Below, piece after piece: positions 7,297 through 45,418 of a DNA stretch of 64,000 nucleotides. Numbering within the stretch: the first letter of the stretch is position 1; each line of letters begins with the position of its first letter. The stretch is taken from IMG/VR virus record IMGVR_UViG_3300035182_002586, positions 248,001-312,000 of that record. One strand, written 5' to 3'. Both the position numbers and the translations under genes were made by a program. Under the pieces are notes generated by a model. The model saw only the letters and a program-made list of their open reading frames with translations. It was not told where the DNA came from and ran no database searches.

Positions 7297-7297
7297 C

Positions 7298-7885: not shown

Positions 7886-7890
7886 GCATG

Positions 7891-9030: not shown

Positions 9031-9773
9031 ACCGCCGTCCCTCCCTTTGACCCGGGGCTGACGATACCCTCCTCGAACGTACGCTCGATGCTCGCAGCCG
9101 TAGCTCCCTTGCCTTCGGGATCGTAGGGGGCGTAGGGGGCGTAAGCCTTCTTTCCGAAGGGGTCCGTCGACGTCGTGATCGCGCGGTAGGACTTGTCGGC
9201 GATGAGGTTCTGGATCTGCACGAACAGCCCTTCGAGGGAGCCTGTCGTGGTAGCACTCTGGTTGATCACCTTGAGGACGGCGATCTCTTGCTGGAGCTGG
9301 TCGGAGTAGTCGAGCAGACGACGGATCTTCCGCTCCAGGTACTCCTTTCGGTAGTCCAGCGTATCCAAGAACGGGGCACGGGCCTGCCCGATGAGTCGTG
9401 CGGAAGGGGCGTCACCAAGCCCCGGAGACCCCATGACATCCCCGTTCGAGAAGGTCTGCGGGCTACCGGTCTCGTCCCCCTTGAGCAAGAATACAGGCTG
9501 CCCTGCACTGCGGAGGTTCAAGTCGTAGTACGCGTCTCCCCCTAGGATCTCGTAGACCGCCAGGAGCTTGCCCAGGTAGGAGTCCACGGGGTCGGCCGTG
9601 AACCTCTTCGGTGTCCCGTCGCTGTTGTAGGCGAAGGCCAAGACCCCGACACGTTCCAGCTCTGCGGAGAGGTGGTCGATTCGGGCCGGTACGGTCGCAA
9701 GCTGCCCTCGGACGAACGCCGCGAAGCGATCGAACTGGCCCTGCGTGAATGTACCGAGAAAGTCGAACGCCAC
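9027..9773 (-). CDS. Hypothetical virion protein
   Basis: AGGAG SD, 4-bp overlap with the next gene, coiled-coil segment. Confidence 0.6.
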   Translation of the reverse strand: MAFDFLGTFTQGQFDRFAAFVRGQLATVPARIDHLSAELERVGVLAFAYNSDGTPKRFTADPVDSYLGKLLAVYEILGGDAYYDLNLRSAGQPVFLLKGDETGSPQTFSNGDVMGSPGLGDAPSARLIGQARAPFLDTLDYRKEYLERKIRRLLDYSDQLQQEIAVLKVINQSATTTGSLEGLFVQIQNLIADKSYRAITTSTDPFGKKAYAPYAPYDPEGKGATAASIERTFEEGIVSPGSKGGTAV

Positions 9774-9810
9774 CTGGGTCTCCTGCTAGAGCGGGCGATT
9801 AAGAGGTTCC

Positions 9811-12273: not shown

Positions 12274-12274
12274 T

Positions 12275-12475
12275 TCAACCCCCGTACTGCGCCTTGGCCA
12301 GCTTCCGTCGAAGCGTCGCTAGCTCACTCTCGGTGGCACTGATCGCGAGGTGAATGACCTCACGCATCTTCCCGTGGATGGCGAATTCGGTCTTGTACTT
12401 CCACTCGACGCCGGGTTTCTCCTCTTCGGGGCAAGGCGGGGCCTCGCCCTCCACAGGCTTCTCTTCGGGGGTCAC
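12275..12475 (-). CDS. Small hypothetical protein
   Basis: GTG 12475 overlaps the upstream TGA (GTGA); 66 aa ending in a coiled coil. Confidence 0.5.
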   Translation of the reverse strand: MTPEEKPVEGEAPPCPEEEKPGVEWKYKTEFAIHGKMREVIHLAISATESELATLRRKLAKAQYGG

Positions 12476-18447: not shown

Positions 18448-18462
18448 GTGCGATCCCGTCTT

Positions 18463-19032
18463 TCATACGATCTGGCCGAACCCCACCCCTGCCGAGGGCG
18501 ACGGAGAAGGTGGTCCCGCTATAGCCACGGGTGATACAAGAGCACTAAAGAGTGCGTCGAGGGCGGTCCCCACCGCCAAAGCCAGCTTGTCGGTTCCTAG
18601 CCCGCTCACCCCCGCAGCCGAAAGTGCGGTCTGGATGAACGGAGATGCAGGCGGTGCGCGAAACGTACAGATGCCTGCTCCTACCCCCACGCTCGGGTGG
18701 GTCGTCATGATCTGGCCTTGCAGGAACGCCTGTGTAAGCCCGATCGAAAGCCCGAGAACCGTGGACGGTGCGAAGGGACCGATGATCTCATGCGCGAGGA
18801 AACCGGCTTGCACGACCGCCTGAACAACAGGCATCGCAACAACCAGTGGGGTCACCCCCGCTCCTACGCCTGCCGTTCCGGTGTCAACGGTTTGGACTTT
18901 GACCAGGGCGACCCAAGCCACTAGCCCGTTGGCGAGCCCCTGCGCCATCTTCGGAACGGCTGCGCCGAGATGTCCCGTCGAAGCCAGGTTCGAGAGAAGA
19001 GCACCCCGGACGCCGGTGGGTGTGAGAGCCAT
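18463..19032 (-). CDS. Hypothetical virion protein (Gly/Ala/Val-rich)
   Basis: Coupled to the upstream stop (TGATG); lies between the spike and the giant structural gene. Confidence 0.55.
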   Translation of the reverse strand: MALTPTGVRGALLSNLASTGHLGAAVPKMAQGLANGLVAWVALVKVQTVDTGTAGVGAGVTPLVVAMPVVQAVVQAGFLAHEIIGPFAPSTVLGLSIGLTQAFLQGQIMTTHPSVGVGAGICTFRAPPASPFIQTALSAAGVSGLGTDKLALAVGTALDALFSALVSPVAIAGPPSPSPSAGVGFGQIV

Positions 19033-19400
19033 CAGTACGTCTCCGGGGAACCAAGAGCGGTTTCAAGGTACTCCGCGATACGGCGGAAAACTTGAGGATC
19101 TGTGCAGTTGTTCTTGAGGGTGTTGGCAAGGTGACTGATAACAGCGATGTTTCCCTGTACGTACCCCAGGACAGGATCGATACGATCCAAAGACATGGAG
19201 TAGGGGTGGGCCTTCCCTTGGCCTAGTACGAATGCTTCTCGTGTGATGGGGCAATGACCATCGTTAGGAAGACACGCTCGGATGTCGTCGAGTGTGACAT
19301 TGAAAGGGAGCCCCTCTCTTGTGGCTCGCGCCCTCGCGTTCCGAAGCAGGTTCACCTCCGGGCGGTCATTGGCATTCGTAGCCTGTGTAGAGGCACTCAT
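19032..19400 (-). CDS. Small HNH-like endonuclease
   Basis: ARARATREGLPFNVT...CPIT...SLDRIDPVLGYVQGNIAVISHLANTLKN matches the common phage SLDRID/GY..GN beta-beta-alpha family; lower GC than neighbours. Confidence 0.75.
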   Translation of the reverse strand: MSASTQATNANDRPEVNLLRNARARATREGLPFNVTLDDIRACLPNDGHCPITREAFVLGQGKAHPYSMSLDRIDPVLGYVQGNIAVISHLANTLKNNCTDPQVFRRIAEYLETALGSPETY

Positions 19401-19403
19401 GTC

Positions 19404-21581
19404 TCAGATTGAGCGTACCATGGCAGCCCCCTGCAAGGGCAAACCGGTAATCCAGTCCAGCGAGGGAGAGCCGGGGGGCATCATCGGCGTCCCCCGGGCA
19501 ACCCCGAGCACAGCCGTTGGCCCGCCCAAGAGCACTTGCGGGGCGACGAGGGAGACCAGGACCGGAGAGGTAATGCTGACCGCGAGCCCGGCGACGAGAG
19601 AGATGGCTCCGGCCGCCGCGTTCATCGAGATGGCTCCGGCCGCCGCGGAGACGGCAACGGCCCCGGCTGTCGCCGTCATCGTGATGCCCCCTGCACCGAC
19701 CTGAACGGCGTAGGCACCCGCAGCGCTTGTGATGGAGGTGGTGCCTCCAAGGACGTTGATCGCGTAGGCACCCGCCGTGACGGTCTGAATCGAGCCCCCC
19801 GCCAGGATCGTGGAGAGCTTCCCGCCCGTAACGATGGTCTCCTGGACCTGTTGGGCGTAGTTGGCCTGCGTCTTCCCGGAAACGAGAGCGTTCCACTCCC
19901 CCGCGTTGAACGTGATGCCCGACTGCGCGTTGAGCTGCATTCGGTCGGCCATGAGGTTGTAGCCGCCGTTGACGGTCGTGCTCTTGGCTCCGAGGATGTT
20001 CTCGACCCAATCCGCCGAGCACAGCACCTCTCCGTTGCCCGTGACGGACATGGAGTAGGCCACATCGTTGATGTCCGGGACCCCCAGGTACTCCGCCGAG
20101 TAGGACGAGTGATACTTGACTTTGATCGCCTGCCCTGCCGACGACGAGCCGATGTCTGCGACGATGCCACCGTCGAGACGCAGGTTGAGCGACACGTTGT
20201 CCGGAGAAGACGCGCCGATGCGGGCCTTGATGCCACCCTCCGCGTTGATCTCGGCGGAGACGTTCTTCGCTGCGTCCGCGTACTTCTCGATGCGGCTGCC
20301 CGGGAGGTTGACGAACAGCTTGCCCTGCTTCGACACGGCGACTGCGAACGAGTCGTCCTCGGTCGTGCCAAGGGGGGAGCGGATCCGCATGAGGTAGGCG
20401 CCCGCCGTGGACTTCGACTCGTCGTCGCCTTCCAGGGGCGTGCGCGGCACTTCCTCCATGGAGAACTTGCCCGGTCCGAGCTGTCCCCATGCGTCGAAGA
20501 TCTTCGGCTTGAGGAGCCGGCCGTACTGCCTCTGCCCCATCCCCGAGAAGGCATCGTTCCCTACGATGGAGCCGAACACCTGCTCGATGAAGATGACGCG
20601 ACGGTCCATCTGGAAGCCGTCGATCTCACCGAGCACGTCCGTGGACGCGTCGGTCGTGTGGTACATCTCCAGCCGGTGCTCCGTGAAAGCGTCGGCGGCC
20701 CCTTTCGGGTCCTCGAAGTTCACGGCCGGTTCGGTGGCTGTATAGAACGTGCGCTTCCCGTTGGAGTACGTGACGGGCGGGAACTCGTTGGCGTCGTTGA
20801 AGGCGTCGAGCACCTTCCCGGAGGAGTTGGCGAACTTGGTTGCGGAGCCGGGGGAGCCGGGGCCCGCGTTCTGGAGGTCGTCTCGACCGAAGTACCGATC
20901 GGCCTCGGTCTTGAGCGTCACTCCGTCCTTGCCGAAAATGTCACCCGGGAGCCAGAACGCCCCTCGACGAGTAGGGCCGGACCAACGGTGAACGCCGGCT
21001 TCCGCCTCGACCCTGTGGGTCGCCTGCATGACGAGGGTTCGCTCCGAGTCGCGCAGCTCGATGAGGTCGCCTGCGCGGTTGCACATGCGAACGTCTTTCG
21101 ACAACGCCAGCTCCGCGCCGGAAGCCGACATGCCGCCCACGTCTCCGGGCTGGAGCTTGAGCCGCTTGTAGCGGATCATCGGGCCGTACACGGCGTCGTA
21201 GAGGGCCTTGTCGGACGAGGCGACGGCGGAGGGGTTCTCCGGTGAGAACGGGTCGAAGCGCAAGCCGCTTCGGTTCCCCACCGGGATGTACCCGAGGATC
21301 ATCGCCTCGTAGAGCTGCTTGTGCTTGCGCCGGTAGCCGATGATGACGAGGGAGTTGACCTCGGGGACGCCGCCCCAGAAGCTCCGGGGTCCGGCCATCG
21401 CCTGCGTGAGGTCGATCTCGAAGCGGTCCCCACCTCCCGTGAGGATCTTCACGTCAGCCTTGAGGTTGATCTCGTCGACGCGCGTGATCAGCCCCACCTT
21501 CATCCCGAAGGCGTCGCCCGAGCTGACGAACTCCTTGCCCGGGACGTGGCCGATAGGCGGGGCGGGGCTCTTGGGGATCAC
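19404..21581 (-). CDS. Baseplate central spike (gp5/VgrG/gpV-like)
   Basis: N-terminal OB-like GLITRVD...GGVPEVNSLVIIGY and C-terminal beta-helix repeats (AGAYAI, AGAVAV, AGAISM, AGAISL). Confidence 0.75.
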   Translation of the reverse strand: MIPKSPAPPIGHVPGKEFVSSGDAFGMKVGLITRVDEINLKADVKILTGGGDRFEIDLTQAMAGPRSFWGGVPEVNSLVIIGYRRKHKQLYEAMILGYIPVGNRSGLRFDPFSPENPSAVASSDKALYDAVYGPMIRYKRLKLQPGDVGGMSASGAELALSKDVRMCNRAGDLIELRDSERTLVMQATHRVEAEAGVHRWSGPTRRGAFWLPGDIFGKDGVTLKTEADRYFGRDDLQNAGPGSPGSATKFANSSGKVLDAFNDANEFPPVTYSNGKRTFYTATEPAVNFEDPKGAADAFTEHRLEMYHTTDASTDVLGEIDGFQMDRRVIFIEQVFGSIVGNDAFSGMGQRQYGRLLKPKIFDAWGQLGPGKFSMEEVPRTPLEGDDESKSTAGAYLMRIRSPLGTTEDDSFAVAVSKQGKLFVNLPGSRIEKYADAAKNVSAEINAEGGIKARIGASSPDNVSLNLRLDGGIVADIGSSSAGQAIKVKYHSSYSAEYLGVPDINDVAYSMSVTGNGEVLCSADWVENILGAKSTTVNGGYNLMADRMQLNAQSGITFNAGEWNALVSGKTQANYAQQVQETIVTGGKLSTILAGGSIQTVTAGAYAINVLGGTTSITSAAGAYAVQVGAGGITMTATAGAVAVSAAAGAISMNAAAGAISLVAGLAVSITSPVLVSLVAPQVLLGGPTAVLGVARGTPMMPPGSPSLDWITGLPLQGAAMVRSI

Positions 21582-21589
21582 GTGCTACC

Positions 21590-24500
21590 TCATCCGAGCT
21601 GAGACAGCTCAGCCTGCTTGTTGGCGATGTCCTGTTGCGTGCTGGCGATCTTCTTGTCGAGCGCGGCGATCTGGTCCGGGAGGCTAGGGTAGGCGATGGT
21701 GGTGCCACTTGCCGCCTGTTGTTCGAGTTGCGCTTTGTCCGACTTGTACCGCTGCAAAGCCTGCTGCTCGTTGGCGATGTCCTGCGAGAGTTGCGTCTTC
21801 TTGGCGTTGTTCTTGAGGTTGCTCCCGAAGCTGCTCCACGCGTTGCCGATGTCCTTGATCGCCGTGGAGGCGTTGCCGAGGGTCGCCTTCGTGTCCCCGA
21901 GTGCGTAGCGATCAGGCTCCGAGAAGGGCGGGGTGAGGTCACCGTAGGGCGTACCCGTGTCCGCAGTCGAACCGTCGACCTCTCCGGGCGTCAGTGCGAT
22001 CCCACCGTCACGGAGACGCTGCTCCAACGCCTGGTGGGGCCCATCGAGCGCCGTGTAGAGGTTGACGAGAAAGAGGTCGACACGCTTGATGACCTCCTCT
22101 CGGGAGGGAGAGAGAAGAGCGCCCGTCACGGGCACTGCATCCGAGATACTCGGTGCGGCCCCGAGACCCACGCCAATCCCACGCGCCTCGTTCAGTGCGG
22201 CGGCGGTAGCCGTGTCGCCCGCGATCACGCCAACGAGCCCCACCGTCTTCCCGTCGTAGAGCGCGGGAGCCGGGCTCGCGGGGGTGAGTACCTGCACCTG
22301 GTAGCCCGTGGAGATGAACGCCAGGTCGCTGCGCCCAAGAATACACGCACAGTCGGTGTCGACGATGGTGTTGCCGTCCTTGACCGTCAGTTCTGCGATC
22401 GTGAGAGCCTTCGAGAGCTGGGACGCCTCCACACTGGAGGGGAGACCCTGAGCTTCTGGTGACCCAAGAGGTGCCGAGTCGACGAAGTTCACGCTGCTGG
22501 TGACCATGCGAAGGTCGGGATCCTTCGAGTCTGGGTTCTGCACCCCGGCCGTCTGGAGGTCCTCCGGTTGGAGCCGGGCCAGGGCATCAGCCGGGTTGGC
22601 GTAGGCGGAGATGAGGGCGGTGATGCCTTGCGACTGCGCCTGGAGAGTCTCGAACAACCCCCCCGAGAGAGCGAGCTGCACGTCGACGTTGGCAGCCTTG
22701 TTCCTCTCACCTGAGTTGTAGACGAGTTGGCCGTCACGGAGAGCGACCCCGCGCCCGTATCGGAAGTGGCCGATGACCTCGAACCCCCGCTCATCGCTGA
22801 CGGGACGGATCATGCCCGTCGATCCCTCGAAGACTTTCGTGTCTGCTCCGGTTGCGTCCGTCGTATGGACGTTCTTCGCCGGGAGGAGCACAAGCTCTCC
22901 GATGGTCTTCTCTTTCTCGTAGGCGTAGACGTACACACCCGCCGAGTTGAGCCCGTACTGGTAGCGGTTGTTCGAGTGCTTCGCACGAAGCTCGTCGATG
23001 CTGTCCGTCATGAAACTAGAGGTCGTCTCATCGACCCTCTTGGCGTAGTTCTCACCCTCTTTCTTCGCATATGCGGCTGAATTCGGATTGGGCGTCGTTT
23101 TGATACCCGCGTCCTTTTTCAACTGATCGGGACTCGTCTTGAACGGGCGCGTGTAGACCATCACCGCATTGGGGTACCCGAGAATGCGGCCCGTCTTCGG
23201 GTGCTGCATGATCAGGGGTTCGTAGGGGTTCACAGCCCCCGGGGCGATGTCTGTGACAGGTGGGACCGTCGCCGCTGTCCCCACCTGCAAGTCGTACGAC
23301 CCGTAGTTGGACAGGGTGCGGGAGCTGTACGGGAAGGCCGCGTTCCCGGGGTTTGAGACGGCCCCACTGGACACACCCTTGAACTTGAGCGTTCCGATCC
23401 CTTTGGGAGCCAGGAACTTCTCCCGCTTCGCGGTCAAGGTCAGCGTGGTCGTAGCGCGCCCGCCGAACGCGATGTTGTGGGAGATGCCGGTGATGTACCA
23501 GATCTGGTCCTTCGGGGCGATGTAGATGGGGAACCCCAGACGCAGCTCCGGTCTGAACGGGATGGTCACCGAGCCGCGATGCCTGCGCGAGTTCTTCCGG
23601 TCCAGGATGTCCAGGCCGTGGTAGAACATGAGCGTGGTGTCGCCCATGAACTCAGAGCTGTAGTTCTCGGGCCTCCACCCGTACTTCCGCAGCAGGTGGT
23701 AGTCGGTGACGGACGTGAAGGGGGTGCACTCCTCGGAGAACCCATAGTCGACGTTCCCGCCGAAGAACCCTTGGAGCGTGAGCTGTGTGACGACTTCGGC
23801 CTCGGACACCGACAGGTTCCACTCGATGATGTCGATGTCTTGGATCCACGAGAGCGGCTTGTTCGACAGGATGTCGAGGTTGTAGAAGGGCGGCTTGAAA
23901 ACGATGGAGCCGTCCACGTCCATGTAGAACTCGAAGCCGATCGCTTCCTTCGCTGAGTTCGCCAGCTCCAGCTTGGTCTGGTACTCGCTCTGCCAGAAGT
24001 TGACCTGCCCTGCCTGTGAGAAGACCGTGTGGAACGCGGTCACCTGCGGATCTGAGGGGTCGAACACCATTTGGCCGCCCTGCGTGCCGCCGTTGGCGTT
24101 TGCCACCGCCGTGGACGCGAAGTGGCCAGGGTCATTCGGTTTCCCGCCCGTGCGGTACGGCTCGTAGAGGGAGTCGCCACGGACGGCGATCCCGTTGACG
24201 CCGTAGAGAAGCAGGTTCGAGCGTACGCGCCGGAACCGCTGTTCCCAGTAGAGCATGATGTCCGAGAAGGCGGAGTTGAACGTCGCCTGCTGCCCGGCTT
24301 CCTTGTAGAGCGACACGAGAGAGCCCGTGCCGATGATGGCGTCGCCGAACGACGACTGCGCCAGGGACCAGATCACGTCGTAGGGGTTCGAGCCGAAGAA
24401 GACGTTGCCGAAGATCGATCGCCCCTGCTGCCCGCTCGGGGCCGTGAACGCAGGGTTGATGTTCATGCGGCACAGCTCCCACCACTTGAGGATGTCGCTG

Positions 24501-24907
24501 CACGAGATCGAGACCGAGTGCTCCCCGCCTGAATAGTCGTCGCCCACTTCGGTGACGAGCCCCCAGAATATGGGGTAATACTGCGGGACACCCTCGACGA
24601 GGTAGAAGCCCTTCGCGTAGATCTCGACCTCCATCATCGGCGTGATGACAGGGTTGCCCTCGAAGTAAAAGTCGTCGATCGTGTGGCGGGGGATCGACAG
24701 CGAGATCGAGGCCGAGCCCGGGACGCTCTCGACGGAGAGGTCTACCTGAACCGACGTGATGTACTTGTTCAAGTCGAAGCGCCGCCTGCACGACGGGCAG
24801 CCGATCATGTCGACTTCCCCGTTGATGTAGACGATCGCGTCGGGCGCCGTCACCACGGTCTGCCGGACGTTCGGCTGGTAGGTCCCCTGAAACGGTCCTC
24901 GTGCCAT
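21590..24907 (-). CDS. Baseplate hub (gp27-like)
   Basis: Immediately upstream of the spike; FEFYMDVDGSIVFKPP and GSVTIPFRPELRLG...WYITGISHNI hub patterns. Confidence 0.7.
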   Translation of the reverse strand: MARGPFQGTYQPNVRQTVVTAPDAIVYINGEVDMIGCPSCRRRFDLNKYITSVQVDLSVESVPGSASISLSIPRHTIDDFYFEGNPVITPMMEVEIYAKGFYLVEGVPQYYPIFWGLVTEVGDDYSGGEHSVSISCSDILKWWELCRMNINPAFTAPSGQQGRSIFGNVFFGSNPYDVIWSLAQSSFGDAIIGTGSLVSLYKEAGQQATFNSAFSDIMLYWEQRFRRVRSNLLLYGVNGIAVRGDSLYEPYRTGGKPNDPGHFASTAVANANGGTQGGQMVFDPSDPQVTAFHTVFSQAGQVNFWQSEYQTKLELANSAKEAIGFEFYMDVDGSIVFKPPFYNLDILSNKPLSWIQDIDIIEWNLSVSEAEVVTQLTLQGFFGGNVDYGFSEECTPFTSVTDYHLLRKYGWRPENYSSEFMGDTTLMFYHGLDILDRKNSRRHRGSVTIPFRPELRLGFPIYIAPKDQIWYITGISHNIAFGGRATTTLTLTAKREKFLAPKGIGTLKFKGVSSGAVSNPGNAAFPYSSRTLSNYGSYDLQVGTAATVPPVTDIAPGAVNPYEPLIMQHPKTGRILGYPNAVMVYTRPFKTSPDQLKKDAGIKTTPNPNSAAYAKKEGENYAKRVDETTSSFMTDSIDELRAKHSNNRYQYGLNSAGVYVYAYEKEKTIGELVLLPAKNVHTTDATGADTKVFEGSTGMIRPVSDERGFEVIGHFRYGRGVALRDGQLVYNSGERNKAANVDVQLALSGGLFETLQAQSQGITALISAYANPADALARLQPEDLQTAGVQNPDSKDPDLRMVTSSVNFVDSAPLGSPEAQGLPSSVEASQLSKALTIAELTVKDGNTIVDTDCACILGRSDLAFISTGYQVQVLTPASPAPALYDGKTVGLVGVIAGDTATAAALNEARGIGVGLGAAPSISDAVPVTGALLSPSREEVIKRVDLFLVNLYTALDGPHQALEQRLRDGGIALTPGEVDGSTADTGTPYGDLTPPFSEPDRYALGDTKATLGNASTAIKDIGNAWSSFGSNLKNNAKKTQLSQDIANEQQALQRYKSDKAQLEQQAASGTTIAYPSLPDQIAALDKKIASTQQDIANKQAELSQLG

Positions 24908-24910
24908 GGT

Positions 24911-26809
24911 TCAGACCCCTACAGCAACTTCGGTGGCGGTCACAGGTAGTTCAGGGGGAGGAGGTGGAACCTTCTCGGCCCCCACATCGGTGACGGTCTT
25001 GGGGATGGCGGAAGAGGACTCGTTGAGGATGGGGTTGGGGGGCACGAAGGGCGGCGCCCCGAAGGTGAGGGCGGGATCGCTCACGTTGTCGAGGAGGAAC
25101 CACGCTCGGACCGTGAACGAGAACGAGTACTCCAGCGTGAACGGGCCCGTGTCGGCCTCGTTGATGCTGAGATTGTCGAAGCTCCCGATGTACAGGATGT
25201 TGTCGTAGTAGATGTAGATCGACCCCACGACAGAGAGCGTGGGAGCGCCCGTCTTCCCGACGATGCCCTCGTTGTTCAGCCACACGCCCCCGTTGTTCTT
25301 GTAGAGCAGGTAGAGGGACAGGAAGTTCTGGTAGCTGTCCGACATGTTGCGGCCCGTGCGGGTGAGCCCCCCACCGCCGGTGCTCATGCTGACTGCGTAG
25401 AAGCCGGCGAGCTTGCCGGACCCTTCGATCTTGTCCTGTTGTTCGCCCCAGTGCTCGATGATGGGTCCGTTACGGCCATAGTTGCCGTCGGAGATGATCT
25501 TCTCCCCGCTCACCTTGAAGCTCGTGGGGTTCACCAGGAGACGGAGAGGCGGCGTCTTCGCCATCTTGTCCAGCTCTCGCTGCGTCGCCTTGATCATCGC
25601 CTCCTGCGCAGCCTGGAAGCTCGTTCCGAGGTCGGTGAGGTTCAGGTCCTTGTTGGAGGTCTTCTCGATCGTCTTCTTCGCCGTGCTGGCGTCACCCGAC
25701 CCGCTCGGCTTCCAGTCCCCCGTCGTTGCTCCGCCAGTGGGGCCCGCACCAGGGTTGAGGGTGCCGTCGGCACCGCCCTTCAAGGCCGCCTCACCTTGCG
25801 CAATGCCGGCAGTGATCCAGTCAGGAAGGGGTTTGTTTGCGTACTCGGCCACCTGGTCGACGTTGATGGCTCCGATAGGCTCTTGGATGACCTTGCCCGT
25901 GGCGTCCTTCTTGGGTACGTCGAAGCCGGGGTTCTGCTGGTAAGCCAGGTCTTGGAAGTCCGCCCGTGGGAACTTGAACCCCGGGTGGTCCTCGATGTAC
26001 TTCTTCTGGTACGCCGCGCTGGCGTACAGGATCCCGGGGGGATTACCGGAGTTCTGGAAGCCCCCGAAATTACGGAGGTAGGCTTCCGTGGCGGTCATAC
26101 CCTTGACGCCACCCTTCGCGAAGAACTTTTCGGCCCAATAGAGCTGGTTGTCGGCCGAGGTGTTCTCGTAGTTCTTCCAGTCCTCTTCCGACATGCCGAT
26201 GCTCTTCGCGGGATCGAGCATCAACTGGTTGAGGCCCTTGGCCACGGGCACAGGGGGGTTACCCTGCTTGTTCACGGCCGTGGTCTTGAAGCCGCTCTCA
26301 CCCTTGATGACGGCAGCGAGGACCTTGGGGTCCACACCAAGGCGCTTACACATCGCCACATACTTCGTCCAGAAGTCCGGTGGTAGGGCTCCGTTGGGCA
26401 GACCCGCTCCACCACTGGTGTTCCCCTTGATGTTCAGCTCGTCGGCGAAGCCTGTGATCGAGGCTACGCTGGCCGAACGATCGAGGTGGCGTCCCGTGAC
26501 GTTGGAAGACGGGGGTAGCACCCCGATGATGAAGGGCTTGGCGTCCTTGTGGTACGCGTCTGACTGAGAGAACCCCACGAAGTCGGAGGTTGCGGGGTCG
26601 TCCTCCGTCCGGAGCCGGCTGTACTGCGTGAGGAGGTTGTAGACCTGCGGGGCGTAGGTGTCCGCCGTGTTCTCGATTTGCTGGTAGACGCGCTGCTCAG
26701 GGGAGGTGGGGGACGCCGTGGTGATGCCACCCGCAGGCACTCCTCCGGTCTCCGTGAGAACGGTGGGGGACGCGCTAGGGTCGACTCCGGTGCTTGTATT
26801 GAGTGCCAC
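24911..26809 (-). CDS. Tail-associated lytic transglycosylase fused to tube-initiator-like domain
   Basis: SLT motif VLAAVIKGESGF...AKGLNQL; the C-terminal LLVNPTSF...EHWGEQ domain is paralogous to the 26819-27550 protein. Confidence 0.7.
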   Translation of the reverse strand: MALNTSTGVDPSASPTVLTETGGVPAGGITTASPTSPEQRVYQQIENTADTYAPQVYNLLTQYSRLRTEDDPATSDFVGFSQSDAYHKDAKPFIIGVLPPSSNVTGRHLDRSASVASITGFADELNIKGNTSGGAGLPNGALPPDFWTKYVAMCKRLGVDPKVLAAVIKGESGFKTTAVNKQGNPPVPVAKGLNQLMLDPAKSIGMSEEDWKNYENTSADNQLYWAEKFFAKGGVKGMTATEAYLRNFGGFQNSGNPPGILYASAAYQKKYIEDHPGFKFPRADFQDLAYQQNPGFDVPKKDATGKVIQEPIGAINVDQVAEYANKPLPDWITAGIAQGEAALKGGADGTLNPGAGPTGGATTGDWKPSGSGDASTAKKTIEKTSNKDLNLTDLGTSFQAAQEAMIKATQRELDKMAKTPPLRLLVNPTSFKVSGEKIISDGNYGRNGPIIEHWGEQQDKIEGSGKLAGFYAVSMSTGGGGLTRTGRNMSDSYQNFLSLYLLYKNNGGVWLNNEGIVGKTGAPTLSVVGSIYIYYDNILYIGSFDNLSINEADTGPFTLEYSFSFTVRAWFLLDNVSDPALTFGAPPFVPPNPILNESSSAIPKTVTDVGAEKVPPPPPELPVTATEVAVGV

Positions 26810-37611: not shown

Positions 37612-37613
37612 CT

Positions 37614-37973
37614 GTGGCTCGGATCGTAGTCTGCGCTGTCGATGTGACGGCGAAACAGCTTCTCTCCCTAGGGACAGACGAACGCCTTCGGTCGGTCACG
37701 GACGCCTTGAAGGTGGAACGGGTCGGTGGACGCCTCACCGTTTCGGTCGATGAAGCGGGGCGGATCCACATAGAGTTCGATGCCCACGGGGCCAGTGACC
37801 CTGTTGTGGAGGCTCAGACTCCACCGATCGAAGAGCCCGGAGAGAAGCTGGAGACGGAGGATCTGCGGCTCACCGTTGACCCTCCGGAGATCTTGATCGC
37901 CGTGCCCACAGAGGAAGAGATGCAGCAGTACGGCACCCTGGAGCCGGACAAGGGCACCACCTCGACGACATGA
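37614..37973 (+). CDS. Hypothetical protein
   Basis: GTG 37614 with a GAGG SD, 2 nt after the upstream stop; acidic C-terminal half. Confidence 0.55.
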   Translation: MARIVVCAVDVTAKQLLSLGTDERLRSVTDALKVERVGGRLTVSVDEAGRIHIEFDAHGASDPVVEAQTPPIEEPGEKLETEDLRLTVDPPEILIAVPTEEEMQQYGTLEPDKGTTSTT

Positions 37974-37980
37974 CCCCCCT

Positions 37981-37987
37981 CGGTGTA
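37981..37987 (+). promoter_or_regulatory. CGGTGTA candidate promoter
   Basis: TA at -13 relative to ATG 37999. Confidence 0.45.
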
Positions 37988-37998
37988 AGAGGGGGGTC

Positions 37999-39696
37999 AT
38001 GGAAGCAACCAAGAAATCCCGTCGTCCCCGATGGTCGGTCGTTCTAGGTACCGTCGCGGGAGTGGTCGCCGTTGCTCTTGTCGTGGCCTGGTTCGTCGCA
38101 CCTGTGATGGTGCGACGCTACGTGGAGCAGCACTACAAGGGGGTCCACATCCAAGGCGGGGTGACCCTATCGTTCCGTGGTGTCGCACTCCACGGGGTCG
38201 AGATCGACAGGGAGGGGGTCAAAGCACAGCTACCCCTCGTGCGTGTGCTCCCGGATGAGAGCGTCGTCGTAGAGGGCGGGACGGCTACCCTCACCCTGAC
38301 GGAAAAGCCAGGGGGCGGTAACAGCGACACGAAGAGACGGGTCGTGGGGTGGTTGGATGCGGCCACGGTCGTGCAGGGGGACGTCAAGGGGACTGCCACG
38401 AAGGTCACGTTCGACGACTTTCGCGTCTGCGCCGAGAAGGTGGAGGCGCAGCACCCAAAGGGTTCGGTGTCTGGTGCCACCGTCTGCGTGAGGAAAGACC
38501 GCACGCTCGTCACGGCCGAGGCGCTGACGGCCACACCGAGCTTCAAGCTCCCCTACATCGACAAGCTGCCGGCCCCGACCCCCAAGGACATCACCGTCAC
38601 TGGCGTCGAGTTCAAACCGAAAGAGCCGAGCGTATCGGTCAAGACGGCCACCTTTGGGCCGGTGTCGGTCAAGTCCGGGTACGCAGCGATCAAGTCCGCG
38701 ACCGTGTATCTCATGGGGGACGTGACTCTGGACCTGGCGGTTCTGCACACGGGGCCGATCACGTTGAAGGACGTGAGCACCAAGATCCCTGTGGCGGATC
38801 TGGCGAACCTGACGAAGATCCCGGTTCAGATCGGCCCCGCTCGGGTGGTGATCAGCCCGGGGGACATGTCCCTCGAAGGGGATGCGAAGTGCCAGGCGTG
38901 GGTCGATGCGTTGCCCACGGAGCTGCGTACGGGCCCCCTTGCCACGATGCGCCTGGAGGGGTCCTTGTCCTTCACAGTCGCCGTGAAGCCCCCCACGCCC
39001 ACGTTCAAGATGAAGGCGGACTGCCACGCCTCGTGTGAGGGGTTCAAGCCTCTGTCGGGGAAGTTCACCTACACGGCCTACGATGCTGACGGAAAGGAGT
39101 TCGTGCGCACGACGGGTCCGGGCACGAAGGACTGGACCCCGATCGGCGAAGTGAGCGCCACGCTTCCGGCCGCCGTGATGTCGACGGAAGACCCCGGGTT
39201 CCTCGGGCACAAGGGGGTCATCCCCGAGGCCATCGAGAACTCGCTGCGGGACGACCTCAAGGCCGACCGCTTCGTGCGCGGGGGCTCCACCATCACGATG
39301 CAGCTCGTGAAGAACGTCTGGCTCCGACGGACCAAGACGCTTGGACGCAAGACCCAAGAGGTCCTGCTGTCGCTCGCGATCGAGTCGTGTCTGTCGAAAG
39401 ACGTGATCATGGAGACGTACCTGAACGTCGTCGAGTTCGGCCCCAATCTCTACGGGGTGGGGCCCGCGTCGCAGCACTACTTCGGAGAAGCTGCGATGAC
39501 TCTCGACCCTGTGCGGTCGTACTACCTGGCTTCGATCCTCCCCGCCCCTCGAAAGGCTCCGCCCCCGAACACCGAGACCTTGGAGCGCATTCGCTCGCTG
39601 ATGATCCGTGTGTCGAAAGAGAGTGGACAGCTCTCGGACACGTTCGGAGCACCTAGCCCTCAGGACGAAGAGGGGTGGGTCGTCAACAAGCCGTAG
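37999..39696 (+). CDS. Membrane-anchored peptidoglycan glycosyltransferase (GT51, monofunctional)
   Basis: N-terminal basic stretch plus TM helix; C-terminal EDPGFLGHKG, RGGSTITMQLVKN, RKTQE and YLNVVEFG GT51 motifs; no transpeptidase domain. Confidence 0.9.
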   Translation: MEATKKSRRPRWSVVLGTVAGVVAVALVVAWFVAPVMVRRYVEQHYKGVHIQGGVTLSFRGVALHGVEIDREGVKAQLPLVRVLPDESVVVEGGTATLTLTEKPGGGNSDTKRRVVGWLDAATVVQGDVKGTATKVTFDDFRVCAEKVEAQHPKGSVSGATVCVRKDRTLVTAEALTATPSFKLPYIDKLPAPTPKDITVTGVEFKPKEPSVSVKTATFGPVSVKSGYAAIKSATVYLMGDVTLDLAVLHTGPITLKDVSTKIPVADLANLTKIPVQIGPARVVISPGDMSLEGDAKCQAWVDALPTELRTGPLATMRLEGSLSFTVAVKPPTPTFKMKADCHASCEGFKPLSGKFTYTAYDADGKEFVRTTGPGTKDWTPIGEVSATLPAAVMSTEDPGFLGHKGVIPEAIENSLRDDLKADRFVRGGSTITMQLVKNVWLRRTKTLGRKTQEVLLSLAIESCLSKDVIMETYLNVVEFGPNLYGVGPASQHYFGEAAMTLDPVRSYYLASILPAPRKAPPPNTETLERIRSLMIRVSKESGQLSDTFGAPSPQDEEGWVVNKP

Positions 39697-39735
39697 CCAG
39701 TCGGAACAATACTCTACTTATGTCTTGTTCCGGCT

Positions 39736-40170: not shown

Positions 40171-40182
40171 TCGACCTATACA
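40168..40182 (+). promoter_or_regulatory. Candidate TA-N7-TAT promoter (TAATCGACCTATACA)
   Basis: Upstream of ATG 40217. Confidence 0.35.
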
Positions 40183-43720: not shown

Positions 43721-44559
43721 CCCACGGCGGCTCGGCCAGCTTGAAGCAGTTGCGCTGAGATCGCAGGATCGAACGAAACTGGGTTCACGTACGTCATCGA
43801 TGCGGGGGCGAAGACTCGGATACGAGGGGCCTGCCTACCCTTGAACTCCTGCTTCGTCCACGCGTCGATGTCCCCTTCCATCACCCCATCGAGAGCATAG
43901 ATCAGGGCTGCAACAGCGATGGTGGTCAACGTGAGTGCCCGCTTCGGGGGCACCACCATCCAGTCCCCGAGGCCACGCGGAAAGCAGAGGATGATGTCGA
44001 TCTCGTCGGCACCCTCTGCAACGGCCACAGACACAGGGTCGTTGCGTCGGATACCCCCATCAACGTAAGAGGCCCCGTCGATCTCTACGGGCGGGAATAC
44101 GAGCGGGATCGCCGCAGAGGCGAGCACCCACTTGGCGAACGAGGCGTCTTCGCTGCTGCTCGTGTGGACCCGGCCGCTTTGCAGCTCCACCGCGCTCACG
44201 ATGCACTTTGTGTGGAAGGTCGAGCTGCCGGTGATGTACCGCTCGACCAGGTGGCGCAGCGGGGTGGTGCTTCGGAACGAAGGCTTGGCTCGAAGCCAGG
44301 GGACGATCCCGGCAAGGGCTCCGAACCAATTCGCACGATGTACGTGACGGGTGTGGAGTTGTGACCAAAGGGCAACGAGTTCGGCCGCCCGGGCCCTCTG
44401 TTCGTCCTTCGGTGCACACGCAAGGAAGGCTCCGTTGAGGGCACCTACACTGGTGCCAACGACGAGATCCCACGTCGCCCCTTGTTCAGCAAGCCCTTGG
44501 ATAGCGCCTGCCTGGAAGGCTCCGAGAGACCCGCCGCCGCTGAGGACGAGGGCTCGCAT
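43714..44559 (-). CDS. Patatin-like phospholipase
   Basis: LSGGGSLGAFQAG glycine loop, GTSVG nucleophile elbow and VDGG catalytic Asp. Confidence 0.92.
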   Translation of the reverse strand: MRALVLSGGGSLGAFQAGAIQGLAEQGATWDLVVGTSVGALNGAFLACAPKDEQRARAAELVALWSQLHTRHVHRANWFGALAGIVPWLRAKPSFRSTTPLRHLVERYITGSSTFHTKCIVSAVELQSGRVHTSSSEDASFAKWVLASAAIPLVFPPVEIDGASYVDGGIRRNDPVSVAVAEGADEIDIILCFPRGLGDWMVVPPKRALTLTTIAVAALIYALDGVMEGDIDAWTKQEFKGRQAPRIRVFAPASMTYVNPVSFDPAISAQLLQAGRAAVGQ

Positions 44560-44570
44560 ACCCTCTCAGG

Positions 44571-44585
44571 CCGATAGGAGGGCTA
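44571..44585 (-). promoter_or_regulatory. Candidate TA-N7-TATC promoter (TAGCCCTCCTATCGG)
   Basis: 11 nt upstream of the patatin ATG. Confidence 0.45.
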
Positions 44586-44620
44586 GCAGGACCCGGATCC
44601 TCTTGTCGCCGCCCCCTGAC

Positions 44621-45418
44621 ATGACCTGGCTCCTCGGACTCGATGCCGCTCGTTGGCAAGGCAAGCTCAAGGGAAACGCACTCGACGGGTGTGTGGTGAA
44701 AGACAACGCCGGCAAGGTCGTCGGCCCCGTCAAGTTCGCGTACTTCAAGGCCACCCACGGCACCGGCGGCGTCGACGAGCAGTTCGTCTGGAACGCTACG
44801 TCGAGCGCGCCGATGAAGCGTCGCGGCTTCTACATGTGGCTCGTCCCGACGCAGGACCCTCTCAAGCAGGCGGATCACTTCTGCGATGTGGTCAGCGAGT
44901 TCGATCGTCCGACGGACCTCCCTCCGGCGATCGACTTCGAGGACGACGGGAATGGCCGTGTTCGAGGGAAAGCGCTTCTCGACATCGCACGCGCTTGTGT
45001 GATGCGTGTGGAAGAGCGCCTCGGTCTGCGCCGGTCGGTTCTCTACACGGGCAAGTGGTTCTGGCAGCAGGCGTGTGCGGACATCGACGACGACTTCTTC
45101 GCGAAGCGTCCCCTCTGGCACGCGCAGTACCCCGGACACGTGGTGAGCGAAGGCGAGAAGCCCGCCATCGCAAAGCCTTGGGCGTCACGGAACATCGCCG
45201 AGACGTTCTGGCAGTTCGACGGGGACAAGGGCCTCTTCCTCCCTGGTGAGGCAACGGCTCTCGGCAAGCCTGTCGATGCCGACTTCAACCGCTTCATGGG
45301 CAGCGAGGAAGACCTCGACACCTTCACGATGTGGGCCCGGACGCCCTCCGTGGCAGCTTGCCCGCCGGACCCGGATGCGATGGCAGACGATTGGCGCAAG
45401 CCTCCCCCCGCAGTCTGA
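44621..45418 (+). CDS. GH25 muramidase (probable endolysin)
   Basis: GLDAARWQG, FAYFKATHG, LPPAIDFE (DxE), LYTG, LWHAQY, FWQF and VDADFN are GH25 motifs. Confidence 0.88.
   Translation: MTWLLGLDAARWQGKLKGNALDGCVVKDNAGKVVGPVKFAYFKATHGTGGVDEQFVWNATSSAPMKRRGFYMWLVPTQDPLKQADHFCDVVSEFDRPTDLPPAIDFEDDGNGRVRGKALLDIARACVMRVEERLGLRRSVLYTGKWFWQQACADIDDDFFAKRPLWHAQYPGHVVSEGEKPAIAKPWASRNIAETFWQFDGDKGLFLPGEATALGKPVDADFNRFMGSEEDLDTFTMWARTPSVAACPPDPDAMADDWRKPPPAV

What the first reader, a model, noticed from the sequence alone, without database searches (positions are those of the whole stretch)
37999..39696. Phage-encoded peptidoglycan polymerase (GT51) with intact catalytic motifs
Phages usually encode wall-degrading enzymes. 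This gene instead encodes a membrane-anchored monofunctional transglycosylase with the catalytic ED and the GxSTITxQL and RKxxE motifs, behind a long periplasmic beta-rich domain. It could repair the entry lesion, delay lysis, or remodel the wall to exclude superinfecting phages. It co-occurs with three muralytic enzymes in this window.
Basis: partly seen in the sequence, partly recalled or inferred. Interest (0 to 1): 0.7.

Follow-up and report, generated by a model that had tools for sequence, protein, structure and literature searches.

The report
Huge-phage peptidoglycan polymerase with lipid-groove domain
A 529-kb bacteriophage genome carries an intact, membrane-anchored cell-wall glycan polymerase (GT51) fused to a lipid-transfer-like beta-groove domain; the gene belongs to a conserved, so far undescribed family found in many huge phages, so some phages appear to build host cell wall as well as degrade it.

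Summary
All catalytic motifs are intact.

The contig is a huge phage, not host chromosome. It is an IMG/VR virus record of 528,957 bp with no 16S gene, 53 clustered tRNAs, a baseplate module 4.5 kb away, and many genes shared with other 300-512 kb viral contigs.

- The gene belongs to a family of at least 70 divergent full-length homologues (26-44% identity) on huge-phage contigs. The catalytic residues are invariant and dN/dS is low.
- On a careful tree all phage copies form one clade (100/99) nested among Polyangiaceae/Labilithrix (Myxococcota) proteins. This points to one old capture, although the gene is accessory: at least one complete relative lacks it.
- The beta-rich domain resembles AsmA/TamB/Lpt-type lipid-groove proteins. 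Uncharacterised chromosomal proteins in Myxococcota and Bacteroidota share this domain arrangement.

The phage has no transpeptidase, SEDS, Mur ligase or MraY gene, so it must rely on host lipid II and host cross-linking. Enzyme activity and physiological role are untested. Only two muralytic domains in the window were verified, not three.

The parts
37999..39696 (+). Complete gene for the 565-aa AsmA-like/GT51 protein (P0001)
   Evidence: ORF and translation. Full-length homologues align from about residue 5 to about residue 550, so the start codon is supported.
37999..38112 (+). Basic cytoplasmic tail (residues 1-11) and single TM anchor (residues about 12-38); predicted N-in, C-out (type II) topology
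   Evidence: Sequence. AF2 models a helix at residues 12-45. Topology is inferred from the positive-inside rule.
38134..38889 (+). Beta-groove domain (residues about 46-297) with an AsmA/TamB/Lpt-like fold
   Evidence: AF2 model of the domain alone has pLDDT 92. Foldseek against Swiss-Prot AFDB puts YicH, TamB, AsmA, YdbH, YhjG, YhdP, Atg2, BLTP2 and LptD near the top at probability 1.0 (top row: an uncharacterised Treponema protein). VIA Z-scores: LptD 10.1 with the whole model; LPD-3 8.2, LptC 8.1 and TamB 7.5 with the domain alone. Homologues pass the Pfam thresholds for LmeA and YdbH-like.
38890..39114 (+). Alpha/beta linker subdomain (residues 298-372) with invariant C298 and C342; shared with the bacterial homologues
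   Evidence: Invariant columns in A1. Matches to bacterial proteins begin at about residue 296.
39115..39648 (+). GT51 peptidoglycan glycosyltransferase domain (residues 373-550); catalytic E397 (39187-39189) and E454 (39358-39360)
   Evidence: Pfam PF00912. Foldseek and VIA match Aquifex PBP1a GT and S. aureus MtgA at Z 18-19. Motif alignment to 2oqo. Catalytic residues invariant in 71 sequences.
37969..38001 (+). Perfect 13-bp palindromic hairpin whose 3' arm holds the GAGGGGGG Shine-Dalgarno-like run and the ATG start codon
   Evidence: Folded as RNA: -28.8 kcal/mol, z -4.4, and 0 of 200 shuffles fold as well. Function not tested.
44351..45418 (+). Context: GH25 muramidase, the likely endolysin, next to a patatin-like phospholipase at 43714-44559(-)
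   Evidence: Pfam PF01183 at 1.1e-18 and PF01734 at 1.1e-33. The same gene neighbourhood is present in the related locus L002.
3835..26809 (-). Context: baseplate and tail module, with baseplate J/wedge at 3835-7296, a hub-like protein at 19404-21581 and an SLT-domain protein at 24911-26809
   Evidence: Pfam PF04865 and PF01464. PHROGs phrog_6, phrog_694 and lytic tail families.

Best explanation
The gene encodes a functional, phage-borne monofunctional peptidoglycan glycosyltransferase, that is, a lipid II polymerase.

How it most likely works:
- After infection the protein inserts into the host cytoplasmic membrane through its N-terminal signal-anchor. The rest of the protein lies in the periplasm. 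This step is inferred from the sequence.
- The C-terminal GT51 domain polymerises host-made lipid II into glycan strands. E397 (motif 1) and E454 (motif 3) are predicted to act as in MtgA and class A PBPs. The catalytic machinery is shown to be intact; activity is inferred.
- The 250-300 residue AsmA/Lpt-like beta-groove between the anchor and the catalytic domain most likely binds a lipid. The candidates are the undecaprenyl tail of the substrate or product, or a membrane lipid. Alternatively it acts as a stalk or docking platform. This step is inferred from the fold alone.
- The phage encodes no transpeptidase, SEDS protein or lipid II synthesis enzyme. Its strands must therefore be made from host lipid II and cross-linked, if at all, by host PBPs or LD-transpeptidases.

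Origin: the gene descends from one old capture of a Polyangia-type (Myxococcota) chromosomal AsmA-like/GT51 gene. It has since been kept under purifying selection in one clade of huge phages as a frequent but dispensable accessory gene.

Most likely role (about 40-45%, inference only): sustaining or reinforcing the sacculus during the long infection cycle of a very large phage, independent of host regulation, and so avoiding premature lysis until the phage's own GH25 endolysin acts.
For: GT51 identity and intact motifs:
- Pfam PF00912 scores 148 bits.
- NCBIfam models for MtgA and PBP1 families all match the same region.
- Motifs align with the solved Aquifex PBP1a GT domain.
- The AF2 model (pLDDT 91.5) superposes on 2oqo and 3vmq at Z 18.8 and 18.5.

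Conservation and selection:
- E397, D398, G428, S430, T431, Q435, R450, K451, E454, K467, N476, Y485 and G486 are invariant in 71 homologues that share only 26-44% identity with the query.
- dN/dS for pairs whose dS is not saturated is 0.00-0.14 in the GT51 part and 0.10-0.17 in the N-domain.

Phage origin:
- The genome is an IMG/VR virus record with CheckV completeness 100%.
- It has no 16S gene and 53 tRNAs plus a tmRNA clustered in 54 kb.
- Baseplate genes end about 4.5 kb upstream of the gene.
- Phage-type DNA polymerase, helicases and RNR are present, plus a protein conserved in more than 500 cultured phages.
- Loci carrying the homologues share many other genes with this genome. Polyangiaceae and Labilithrix loci share only this gene.
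- Read depth is even and the sequence is identical in an independent assembly of the likely source sample. Fragments also occur in metagenomes from three other studies.

Family and phylogeny:
- 53 IMG/VR loci carry relatives, mostly on 200-512 kb contigs.
- The phage sequences form one clade at 100/99 support. Their sister group is four Polyangiaceae sequences (98/95).

N-domain fold.

No partner genes were found: PF00905, PF03734, PF01098, PF08245 and PF00953 are all absent from the genome.
Against: - No biochemical evidence exists for any phage or bacterial member of this AsmA-like/GT51 architecture. No literature on it was found.
- Canonical GT51 enzymes sit on the membrane, next to their TM helix. 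How the active site reaches membrane-embedded lipid II is therefore unresolved.
- Motif 5 (RRxxVL) is degenerate (IRSLMIRV). The first Q of the TITQQ motif is M.
- The gene is not essential to the clade. A complete 447,761-bp relative with direct terminal repeats lacks it, as do several others.
- The N-domain fold matches are of middling strength (Z 8-10, TM 0.2-0.35). P0001 itself has no Pfam match in that region.
- The physiological role rests on inference only. Expression timing is unknown, and no RNA runs were found.
Confidence: 0.72

Rival explanations
1. The gene is a host chromosomal gene. On this reading the contig, or this part of it, is bacterial DNA, a host flank of a provirus or a chimeric assembly, so no phage encodes a GT51.
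For: IMG/VR classes the record as 'provirus'. The nearest cellular relatives are chromosomal Myxococcota genes. The neighbouring genes look cellular: L7/L12, aspartate carbamoyltransferase and HU.
Against: - The gene lies in the middle of the record, at 286 kb of 529 kb, and 4.5 kb from baseplate genes.
- Homologues sit on more than 40 other viral contigs whose flanking genes match genes spread over 5-423 kb of this genome.
- The locus L002 is syntenic over window 31.4-50.4 kb, including the HU gene.
- There is no rRNA gene and no tyrosine integrase.
- Depth is even, and one contig from an independent assembly of what is probably the source sample, so not fully independent, covers 34848-39441 without a single difference.
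- The phage copies form their own clade, separate from all bacterial copies.
Confidence: 0.03
2. The enzyme is active but serves lysis or host takeover rather than wall maintenance. An unregulated polymerase would drain lipid II and undecaprenyl phosphate into uncross-linked strands in a futile cycle. This would weaken the wall or starve other envelope pathways and so prime the cell for the GH25 endolysin and the patatin-like phospholipase encoded nearby.
For: - The phage has no transpeptidase partner.
- The gene lies within 6 kb of a GH25 muramidase and a patatin-like phospholipase, and this arrangement is kept in the related locus L002.
- From general knowledge: uncoupling glycan polymerisation from cross-linking is toxic in E. 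coli, as in the beta-lactam-induced futile cycle.
Against: - Phages with holin/endolysin systems do not need this step.
- The strong conservation of a large extra lipid-groove domain (dN/dS 0.10-0.17 in unsaturated pairs) is not explained by a simple lipid II sink.
- Host PBPs could cross-link the strands.
- No data exist on expression timing.
Confidence: 0.12
3. The enzyme remodels or thickens the wall to protect the infected cell from competitors. It would seal the entry lesion made by the tail SLT or lysozyme, or alter the sacculus so that superinfecting phages cannot penetrate.
For: The virion carries an SLT-domain tail protein that must cut the wall at entry. Huge phages carry many superinfection and defence-related genes; the window holds GmrSD_N and Acb1/LigT-like genes. 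The gene's accessory, dispensable status fits a conflict function.
Against: No direct evidence supports it. A single entry hole is small compared with what host repair synthesis can handle. A glycosyltransferase does not change the chemistry of the wall, only how much is made and where.
Confidence: 0.1
4. The GT51 domain is a binding module or pseudo-enzyme, or acts on a lipid-linked substrate other than lipid II. On this reading the real function lies in the AsmA-like domain, for example lipid transport between the membranes.
For: The AsmA-like fold is typical of lipid transporters. Motif 5 is degenerate. The architecture has not been characterised even in bacteria.
Against: All residues known to be catalytic or substrate-binding in GT51 enzymes are invariant across 71 divergent sequences, and dN/dS in the GT51 part is 0.00-0.14 in unsaturated pairs. 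A pseudo-enzyme would be expected to lose them. GT51 has no known substrate other than lipid II (general knowledge). The groove is only 250-300 residues long, much shorter than the periplasm-spanning AsmA-like transporters (600-1260 aa).
Confidence: 0.05

Closest known systems
Monofunctional peptidoglycan glycosyltransferase MtgA (E. coli; S. aureus, PDB 3vmq/3hzs)
   Same: Both have a single N-terminal membrane anchor, a GT51 domain with no transpeptidase domain, and the same catalytic motifs. The fold match is Z 17.5-18.5.
   Different: MtgA is 240-270 aa, and its TM helix leads directly into the GT51 domain. Here about 330 extra residues (beta-groove plus Cys-containing linker) lie between the two. 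The score against the MtgA equivalog model TIGR02070 is 135 bits, below the 182.65 cut-off, so the protein is not an MtgA orthologue. It is also encoded by a phage.
GT domain of class A PBPs (Aquifex aeolicus PBP1a, PDB 2oqo/3nb6; E. coli PBP1b)
   Same: This is the best match among solved structures by both sequence and structure: 35% identity, E 2.3e-25, Z 18.8. Motifs 1 to 4 align.
   Different: There is no transpeptidase domain and no UB2H or OB regulatory domain. The accessory domain is N-terminal to the GT domain and of a different fold.
Uncharacterised bacterial AsmA-like/GT51 proteins (Polyangiaceae and Labilithrix luteola, 800-920 aa; Bacteroides xylanisolvens, 650 aa; AFDB clusters named 'GT51/DUF748 domain-containing protein')
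   Same: The domain order is the same: TM anchor, beta-groove, Cys linker, GT51. Identity is 36-47% over residues about 296-550. The phage clade nests among the Polyangia sequences.
   Different: The bacterial proteins are longer, with a larger groove. They sit in ordinary chromosomal contexts and share no flanking genes with the phage. None appears to have been studied.
AsmA-like and bridge-like lipid transfer proteins (TamB, YhdP, YdbH, AsmA, YicH; Atg2/BLTP) and the Lpt beta-jellyroll proteins (LptC, LptD N-terminal domain)
   Same: An N-terminal TM helix is followed directly by a repeating beta-groove. They are among the top Foldseek hits for the isolated N-domain at probability 1.0 (the top row is an uncharacterised Treponema protein), and VIA gives Z 7.5-10. 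Family members pass the Pfam thresholds for LmeA and YdbH-like.
   Different: The groove is much shorter (about 250-300 residues against 600-1260) and ends in an enzyme instead of an outer-membrane-docking segment. P0001 itself has no Pfam match in this region, and TM-scores are low (0.2-0.35). Lipid binding is not shown.
GT51 genes annotated in deposited phage records (for example 'mtgA' in Microcystis phage MaAM05, 273,876 bp; 'penicillin-binding protein' in MW462191; PHROG 33002)
   Same: These are GT51 domains in phage records. Together with this finding they show that the finding is not unique in kind.
   Different: They match only the GT51 part (24-35% of the query, 30-44% identity). None covers the N-domain (0 of 57 records reach 80% coverage). 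Many of the 57 records are short or unannotated, or are bacterial WGS contigs within the collection. No publication discussing them was found.

Membership tests
GT51 peptidoglycan glycosyltransferase (Pfam PF00912 Transgly) | Profile match above the curated threshold | tested here: met
   148.4 bits against a cut-off of 27, E 1.9e-43, covering residues 374-534 and profile positions 11-172 of 178. Confirmed in six-frame search at 151.8 bits.
GT51 peptidoglycan glycosyltransferase (Pfam PF00912 Transgly) | Motif 1 EDxxFxxHxG with the catalytic Glu, and motif 3 RKxxE with the second Glu | tested here: met
   EDPGFLGHKG (E397) and RKTQE (E454) align with TEDRNFWHHFG and RKIKE of Aquifex PBP1a. Both are invariant in 71 homologues.
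GT51 peptidoglycan glycosyltransferase (Pfam PF00912 Transgly) | Motif 2 GxSTITQQ, motif 4 KxxILxxYxN and motif 5 RRxxVL | tested here: inconclusive
   Motif 2 is present as GGSTITMQL, with M in place of the first Q; G428, S430, T431 and Q435 are invariant. Motif 4 is present as KDVIMETYLN, with K467 and N476 invariant. Motif 5 is degenerate: IRSLMIRV aligns to RRNLVLKRM.
GT51 peptidoglycan glycosyltransferase (Pfam PF00912 Transgly) | Lysozyme-like head-plus-jaw fold | tested here: met
   The AF2 model (pLDDT 91.5) matches 2oqo at Z 18.8 (178 of 181 residues), 3vmq at Z 18.5 and 3nb6 with TM-by-target 0.79.
GT51 peptidoglycan glycosyltransferase (Pfam PF00912 Transgly) | Lipid II polymerisation that is sensitive to moenomycin | not testable with these tools
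   This needs biochemistry.
MtgA orthologue (NCBIfam TIGR02070 equivalog) | Score above the equivalog cut-off, and a length of about 240 aa with the TM helix directly before the GT51 domain | tested here: not met
   135.3 bits against a cut-off of 182.65. The protein is 565 aa with a roughly 330-residue insertion between anchor and GT51. It works like an MtgA but is not a member of that orthologous group.
Class A penicillin-binding protein | A transpeptidase (PF00905) domain C-terminal to the GT51 domain | tested here: not met
   No PF00905 match in the protein or anywhere in the 529-kb genome. Scores against PBP1a, 1b and 1c models are far below their cut-offs.
AsmA-like / repeating beta-groove lipid-transfer superfamily (N-domain only) | N-terminal TM helix followed by a beta-groove (taco) fold | tested here: met
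   For the isolated domain model (pLDDT 92), the top Foldseek Swiss-Prot hits are dominated by YicH, TamB, AsmA, YdbH, YhjG, YhdP, Atg2, BLTP2 and Hobbit, beginning at their residue about 38 just after the TM helix, at probability 1.0 and E 2e-7 to 1e-4; the top row itself is an uncharacterised Treponema protein. VIA gives LPD-3 8.2, LptC 8.1, LptD 8.0-10.1 and TamB 7.5. The strength is middling, with TM-scores of 0.2-0.35.
AsmA-like / repeating beta-groove lipid-transfer superfamily (N-domain only) | Sequence-profile membership (Pfam AsmA, DUF748, YdbH-like or LmeA) | tested here: inconclusive
   P0001 itself has no Pfam hit in residues 1-373. Family member P0019 passes the LmeA threshold (35.3 against 27.3). 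The longer homologue P0121 passes YdbH-like (29.5 against 26.3). DUF748 hits are below the cut-off.
AsmA-like / repeating beta-groove lipid-transfer superfamily (N-domain only) | A hydrophobic groove that binds or transfers lipid | not testable with these tools
The strands are only moderately amphipathic, with mean Kyte-Doolittle values of +1.9 and -0.4 on alternate faces, which does not discriminate between the possibilities.
Bona fide (huge) tailed phage genome | Phage structural and replication genes, no cellular core genes, and kinship to other viral genomes | tested here: met
   Baseplate wedge/J, hub-like and SLT tail proteins. DNA polymerase, helicases and RNR PHROGs, plus a protein shared with more than 500 cultured phages. 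No 16S gene. A tRNA array and tmRNA. IMG/VR virus record with CheckV 100%. Gene sharing with 300-512 kb viral contigs. Terminase and sheath were not recognised by the Pfam models tried. The major capsid protein was not searched for.

The most novel reading that the evidence does not exclude
The AsmA/Lpt-like groove may be a functional lipid slide. It would lift the undecaprenyl tail of lipid II, or of the growing strand, out of the inner membrane, so that the GT51 domain polymerises glycan at a distance from the membrane, near the sacculus. That would be a mode of wall synthesis unlike any characterised PBP, SEDS or MtgA system. It would be used by Myxococcota and Bacteroidota, and taken over by a clade of huge phages to build wall independently of host regulators.
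Probability: 0.12. Interest if true: 0.9.

Novelty: new variant of a known kind. Interest (0 to 1): 0.62.

Why it matters
Phages are known for cutting or blocking peptidoglycan. A polymerase kept under purifying selection in dozens of huge phages, with GC contents from 36 to 68%, implies that maintaining or re-shaping the host wall can pay off during infection. This widens the picture of how very large phages manage their host.

The finding also points to a widespread, unstudied bacterial architecture: a lipid-groove domain fused to a GT51 domain, present in Myxococcota and in common gut Bacteroides. Its mechanism bears on how lipid II reaches polymerases and on moenomycin-type drug targets.

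The phage versions are the shortest natural forms of this architecture (520-600 aa). They are therefore convenient for structural and biochemical work.

Tried and rejected
- Nucleotide search of 18 kb around the gene against 50,697 deposited phages found no match.
- Pfam terminase (PF03237) and sheath (PF04984) models found nothing in the genome. I take this as divergence rather than absence, because baseplate and replication genes are present.
- The idea that the Polyangiaceae sister sequences are themselves mis-binned phage contigs was rejected. They share no other gene with this genome, they have the long bacterial architecture, and Labilithrix luteola carries its copy on a 12.2-Mb chromosome.
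- Conversely, the only two 'bacterial' full-length matches are on short MAG contigs: L060 (Omnitrophota, 10.8 kb) and L061 (Ignavibacteria, 3.6 kb). Both fall inside the phage clade, and L060 also carries the phage marker gene. I treat them as phage contigs binned into MAGs.
- Congruence between GT51 distances and one phage marker protein (15 contigs) was weak: Spearman 0.27, with 86 of 2000 permutations as high. One marker ORF was probably chosen wrongly. The test is inconclusive on vertical versus horizontal spread among phages.
- A search for RNA-seq runs found only DNA metagenomes, so expression timing is unknown.
- The sigma-70 promoter scan found nothing near the gene.
- Eight literature searches and three papers read found nothing on phage GT51 or on AsmA-GT51 fusions.
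- No attempt was made to assign the present host. GC content (64%) and the Polyangia sister group are suggestive only.
- The AF2 coordinates could not be read, so the distance between the anchor and the active site, and the polarity of the groove, were not measured.
Full report
**Observation**

Third-position GC is 0.83, typical of real genes in this 64% GC sequence. The translation begins with a basic tail (MEATKKSRRPRW) and a hydrophobic stretch at residues 12-38, and ends in a GT51 domain. Pfam PF00912 scores 148 bits against a cut-off of 27 (E 1.9e-43, residues 374-534). The NCBIfam models for MtgA, PBP1a, PBP1b and PBP1c all hit the same region but fall below their equivalog cut-offs.

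They align column for column with the solved GT domain of Aquifex aeolicus PBP1a (2oqo): EDPGFLGHKG, GGSTITMQL, RKTQE, KDVIMETYLN and YG. Only motif 5 is degenerate. There is no transpeptidase domain.

**Is it a phage?**

The window is positions 248,001-312,000 of a single 528,957-bp contig that IMG/VR holds as a virus record. It is classed 'provirus', with CheckV completeness 100%. The evidence that it is a phage:
- The contig has no 16S rRNA gene and no tyrosine integrase.
- It carries 53 tRNA genes plus a tmRNA, packed into 123-177 kb. From general knowledge, this is a hallmark of huge phages.
- Window 1-33.5 kb is a minus-strand run of very large genes: a baseplate J/wedge protein, a hub-like protein and an SLT-domain tail protein.
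- Elsewhere the genome encodes phage-type DNA polymerase, helicases and ribonucleotide reductase. It also encodes a protein (phrog_2426) with homologues in more than 500 cultured phages.
- An independent Logan assembly of what is probably the source sample (X1) holds window 34848-39441 on one contig with no differences and even depth. Identical fragments occur in two microbial-mat metagenomes, and a roughly 95% relative occurs in groundwater.

Pfam models for terminase and sheath found nothing, which I attribute to divergence.

**A family, not a singleton**

A search of 5.8 billion proteins returned about 70 full-length homologues of 520-610 aa, with more than 85% coverage and 26-44% identity. 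Many are on contigs of 200-460 kb. Their neighbourhoods are phage-like, with mostly unannotated genes. One locus, L002, is syntenic with window 31.4-50.4 kb.

A scan of IMG/VR found 53 loci, most on contigs of 200-512 kb. Their flanking genes match genes spread across this genome, and their GC content ranges from 0.36 to 0.68.

In the 71-sequence alignment the following are invariant: E397, D398, F401, H404, G406, R427, G428, S430, T431, Q435, R450, K451, E454, K467, N476, Y485 and G486, together with two cysteines, C298 and C342. Conserved cysteine pairs fit an oxidising, extracytoplasmic location; that is an inference.

For phage pairs whose dS is not saturated, dN/dS is 0.00-0.14 in the GT51 part and 0.10-0.17 in the N-terminal part. 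Both domains are therefore under purifying selection in phages.

**How widespread within the clade?**

As a marker I used the conserved protein at G000:114076-115596. I found 14 marker-positive IMG/VR contigs of at least 300 kb:
- Nine carry the GT51 gene.
- Four lack it, but these are only 68-86% complete.
- One lacks it and is a complete 447,761-bp genome with direct terminal repeats.

Two smaller marker-positive genomes, 90% and 100% complete, also lack it. The gene is thus frequent but dispensable.

**Origin**

In 185,579 species-representative prokaryotic genomes, full-length matches occur only on two short MAG contigs. Both fall inside the phage clade and are probably mis-binned phage DNA. 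Genuine bacterial matches cover only residues about 296-550, at 36-47% identity. They belong to longer proteins: 800-920 aa in Polyangiaceae and Labilithrix, including the 12.2-Mb Labilithrix luteola chromosome, and about 650 aa in Bacteroidota, including Bacteroides xylanisolvens. These sit in ordinary chromosomal contexts and share no other gene with the phage.

I built a careful maximum-likelihood tree of the shared region: 90 rows, 281 columns, model LG+C20+F+G4, with three long rows, redundant Bacteroidota and four near-duplicates left out. Its main results (the quick 124-row tree agrees):
- All 42 phage rows form one clade (ultrafast bootstrap 100, SH-aLRT 99).
- Their sister group is four Polyangiaceae sequences (98/95), and the next group out is other Polyangia (90/96).
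- The roughly 550-aa architecture is a derived subclade (100/100). The basal phage members are 620-720 aa.

Caveats: only the 80 best bacterial hits were sampled. The outgroup of short MtgA-like proteins was not monophyletic. The bootstrap had not fully converged. Congruence with a single phage marker was weak.

**The beta-rich domain**

AF2 with the family alignment gives a confident model (pLDDT 91.5, pTM 0.82). It shows a TM helix at 12-45, about 20 strands at 49-297, an alpha/beta linker at 298-372 and the GT51 domain at 388-550. The GT51 part superposes on Aquifex PBP1a GT and S. aureus MtgA at Z 18-19.

The N-domain gives the following matches:
- With the whole model, it hits the LptD N-terminal jellyroll (Z 10.1), LptC, LPD-3, TamB and Vps13.
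- Modelled alone (pLDDT 92), its top Foldseek hits in Swiss-Prot are dominated by E. coli AsmA-family proteins (YicH, TamB, AsmA, YdbH, YhjG, YhdP), beginning just after their own TM helix. Eukaryotic bridge-like lipid transfer proteins and LptD follow. The top row itself is an uncharacterised Treponema protein. All are at probability 1.0 but with low TM-scores.
- VIA gives Z 7.5-8.2 for the domain alone.

At the sequence level, P0001 has no Pfam hit in this region. However, the family member P0019 passes the LmeA threshold, the longer homologue P0121 passes YdbH-like, and several others show sub-threshold DUF748. AFDB clusters hold cellular proteins with the same two-domain build, named only 'GT51' or 'DUF748 domain-containing'.

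I conclude that the domain is an AsmA/Lpt-like beta-groove. Lipid binding is inferred, not shown.

**Mechanism**

Shown: intact catalytic machinery, a signal-anchor, conservation and purifying selection, and a phage context. Also shown is the absence from the genome of transpeptidase (PF00905), LD-transpeptidase (PF03734), SEDS (PF01098), Mur ligase (PF08245) and MraY (PF00953) genes.

Inferred: the protein inserts N-in and C-out into the host inner membrane and polymerises host lipid II, and host enzymes cross-link the strands.

What the groove does is open. It may hold the undecaprenyl tail of the substrate or product, act as a stalk, or dock on the envelope. The geometry could not be measured.

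The role I think most likely is keeping wall synthesis going, unregulated by the host, through a long infection until the phage's own GH25 endolysin acts. That endolysin lies at 44351-45418, next to a patatin-like phospholipase. The alternatives are a lipid II sink that aids lysis, and entry-lesion repair or superinfection exclusion. None can be decided here.

**Comparison with what is known, and novelty**

The protein works like an MtgA but fails the MtgA equivalog test. It is not a class A PBP. A few deposited phage records carry GT51 genes annotated 'mtgA' or 'penicillin-binding protein', and PHROG 33002 exists. These match only the catalytic part.

I found no paper on phage GT51 enzymes or on AsmA-like/GT51 fusions. 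The huge-phage survey by Al-Shayeb et al. (PMC7162821) and the jumbo-phage comparative analysis (PMC7824862) do not mention them. One marine survey (PMC10732071) lists 'peptidoglycan biosynthesis' AMGs only in passing.

I rate the finding as a new variant of a known kind. The enzyme family is classical. The fusion architecture, its conservation in a huge-phage clade and the implied wall-building activity of phages are not described.

Noticed in passing
window:37969-38001: A perfect 13-bp GC-rich palindrome (CATGACCCCCCTC, 7 nt, GAGGGGGGTCATG) ends exactly on the ATG of the GT51 gene, so the Shine-Dalgarno-like run and the start codon are sequestered. Folded as RNA it gives -28.8 kcal/mol, z -4.4. 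Because it is palindromic, the minus strand carries the same SD+ATG arrangement. It could be a translational control element, a protein-binding site or a terminator for the upstream gene.
   Followed up: partly
G000:123254-176528 (outside the window): An array of 53 tRNA genes plus a tmRNA (tag ANDNGTVITALKAAA). It includes a predicted suppressor tRNA with anticodon TTA, which reads TAA, at 123254-123328. All ORFs studied here read normally under table 11, and no recoding was assumed.
   Followed up: no
window:40663-41049 (+) and 41072-42043 (+): A phage-encoded ribosomal protein L7/L12 (both Pfam domains) and an aspartate/ornithine carbamoyltransferase lie directly downstream of the GT51 gene. 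The carbamoyltransferase is also present near the GT51 gene in the related phage locus L029, at 59% identity.
   Followed up: partly
window:36645-37118 (-): An HU-like DNA-binding protein (PF00216) with an N-terminal extension of about 60 residues. It is conserved at the syntenic position in L002.
   Followed up: no
window:43714-44559 (-) and 44351-45418 (+): A patatin-like phospholipase lies beside a GH25 muramidase. The two overlap as called, so the start of the GH25 gene is probably further downstream. The same pair, patatin plus a PG_binding_1 protein, follows the GT51 gene in L002. This may be an envelope-disruption cassette.
   Followed up: partly
window:51997-52770 (+), 58135-58665 (+), 63104-63994 (-): A LigT/2',5'-RNA-ligase-type phosphoesterase with a weak Acb1 (anti-CBASS) match, a GmrSD_N-domain protein and a ThyX thymidylate synthase. 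These are candidates for counter-defence and nucleotide metabolism.
   Followed up: no
window:39697-40160: A roughly 95%-identical relative in a groundwater metagenome (run X4) joins 39696 directly to 40161. It therefore lacks the small, weakly coding ORF(s) just downstream of the GT51 gene. Codon-phase signal is also weak across 39700-40500.
   Followed up: partly
L060 (Omnitrophota MAG contig), L061 (Ignavibacteria MAG contig), L080 (MAG labelled Enterobacteriaceae): L060 and L061 are short contigs carrying the phage-type full-length gene, and L060 also carries the phage marker gene. They are probably phage DNA binned into MAGs. L080 is nearly identical to a Myxococcota MAG sequence (L076), so its taxonomic label is doubtful.
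   Followed up: partly
L108:4768-6720 (Bacteroides xylanisolvens XB1A) and L189: Gut Bacteroides carry a conserved chromosomal 650-aa protein with the same TM, beta-groove (weak DUF748) and GT51 build. The exact sequence is indexed in about 3000 assembly blocks. It seems to be uncharacterised.
   Followed up: partly
window:12472-18447 (-): A 1991-aa protein in the tail/baseplate module has no PHROG match and only a sub-threshold Pfam hit (Poly_export). Several other very large structural-module genes (820, 1105 and 1171 aa) also have no recognisable domains.
   Followed up: no
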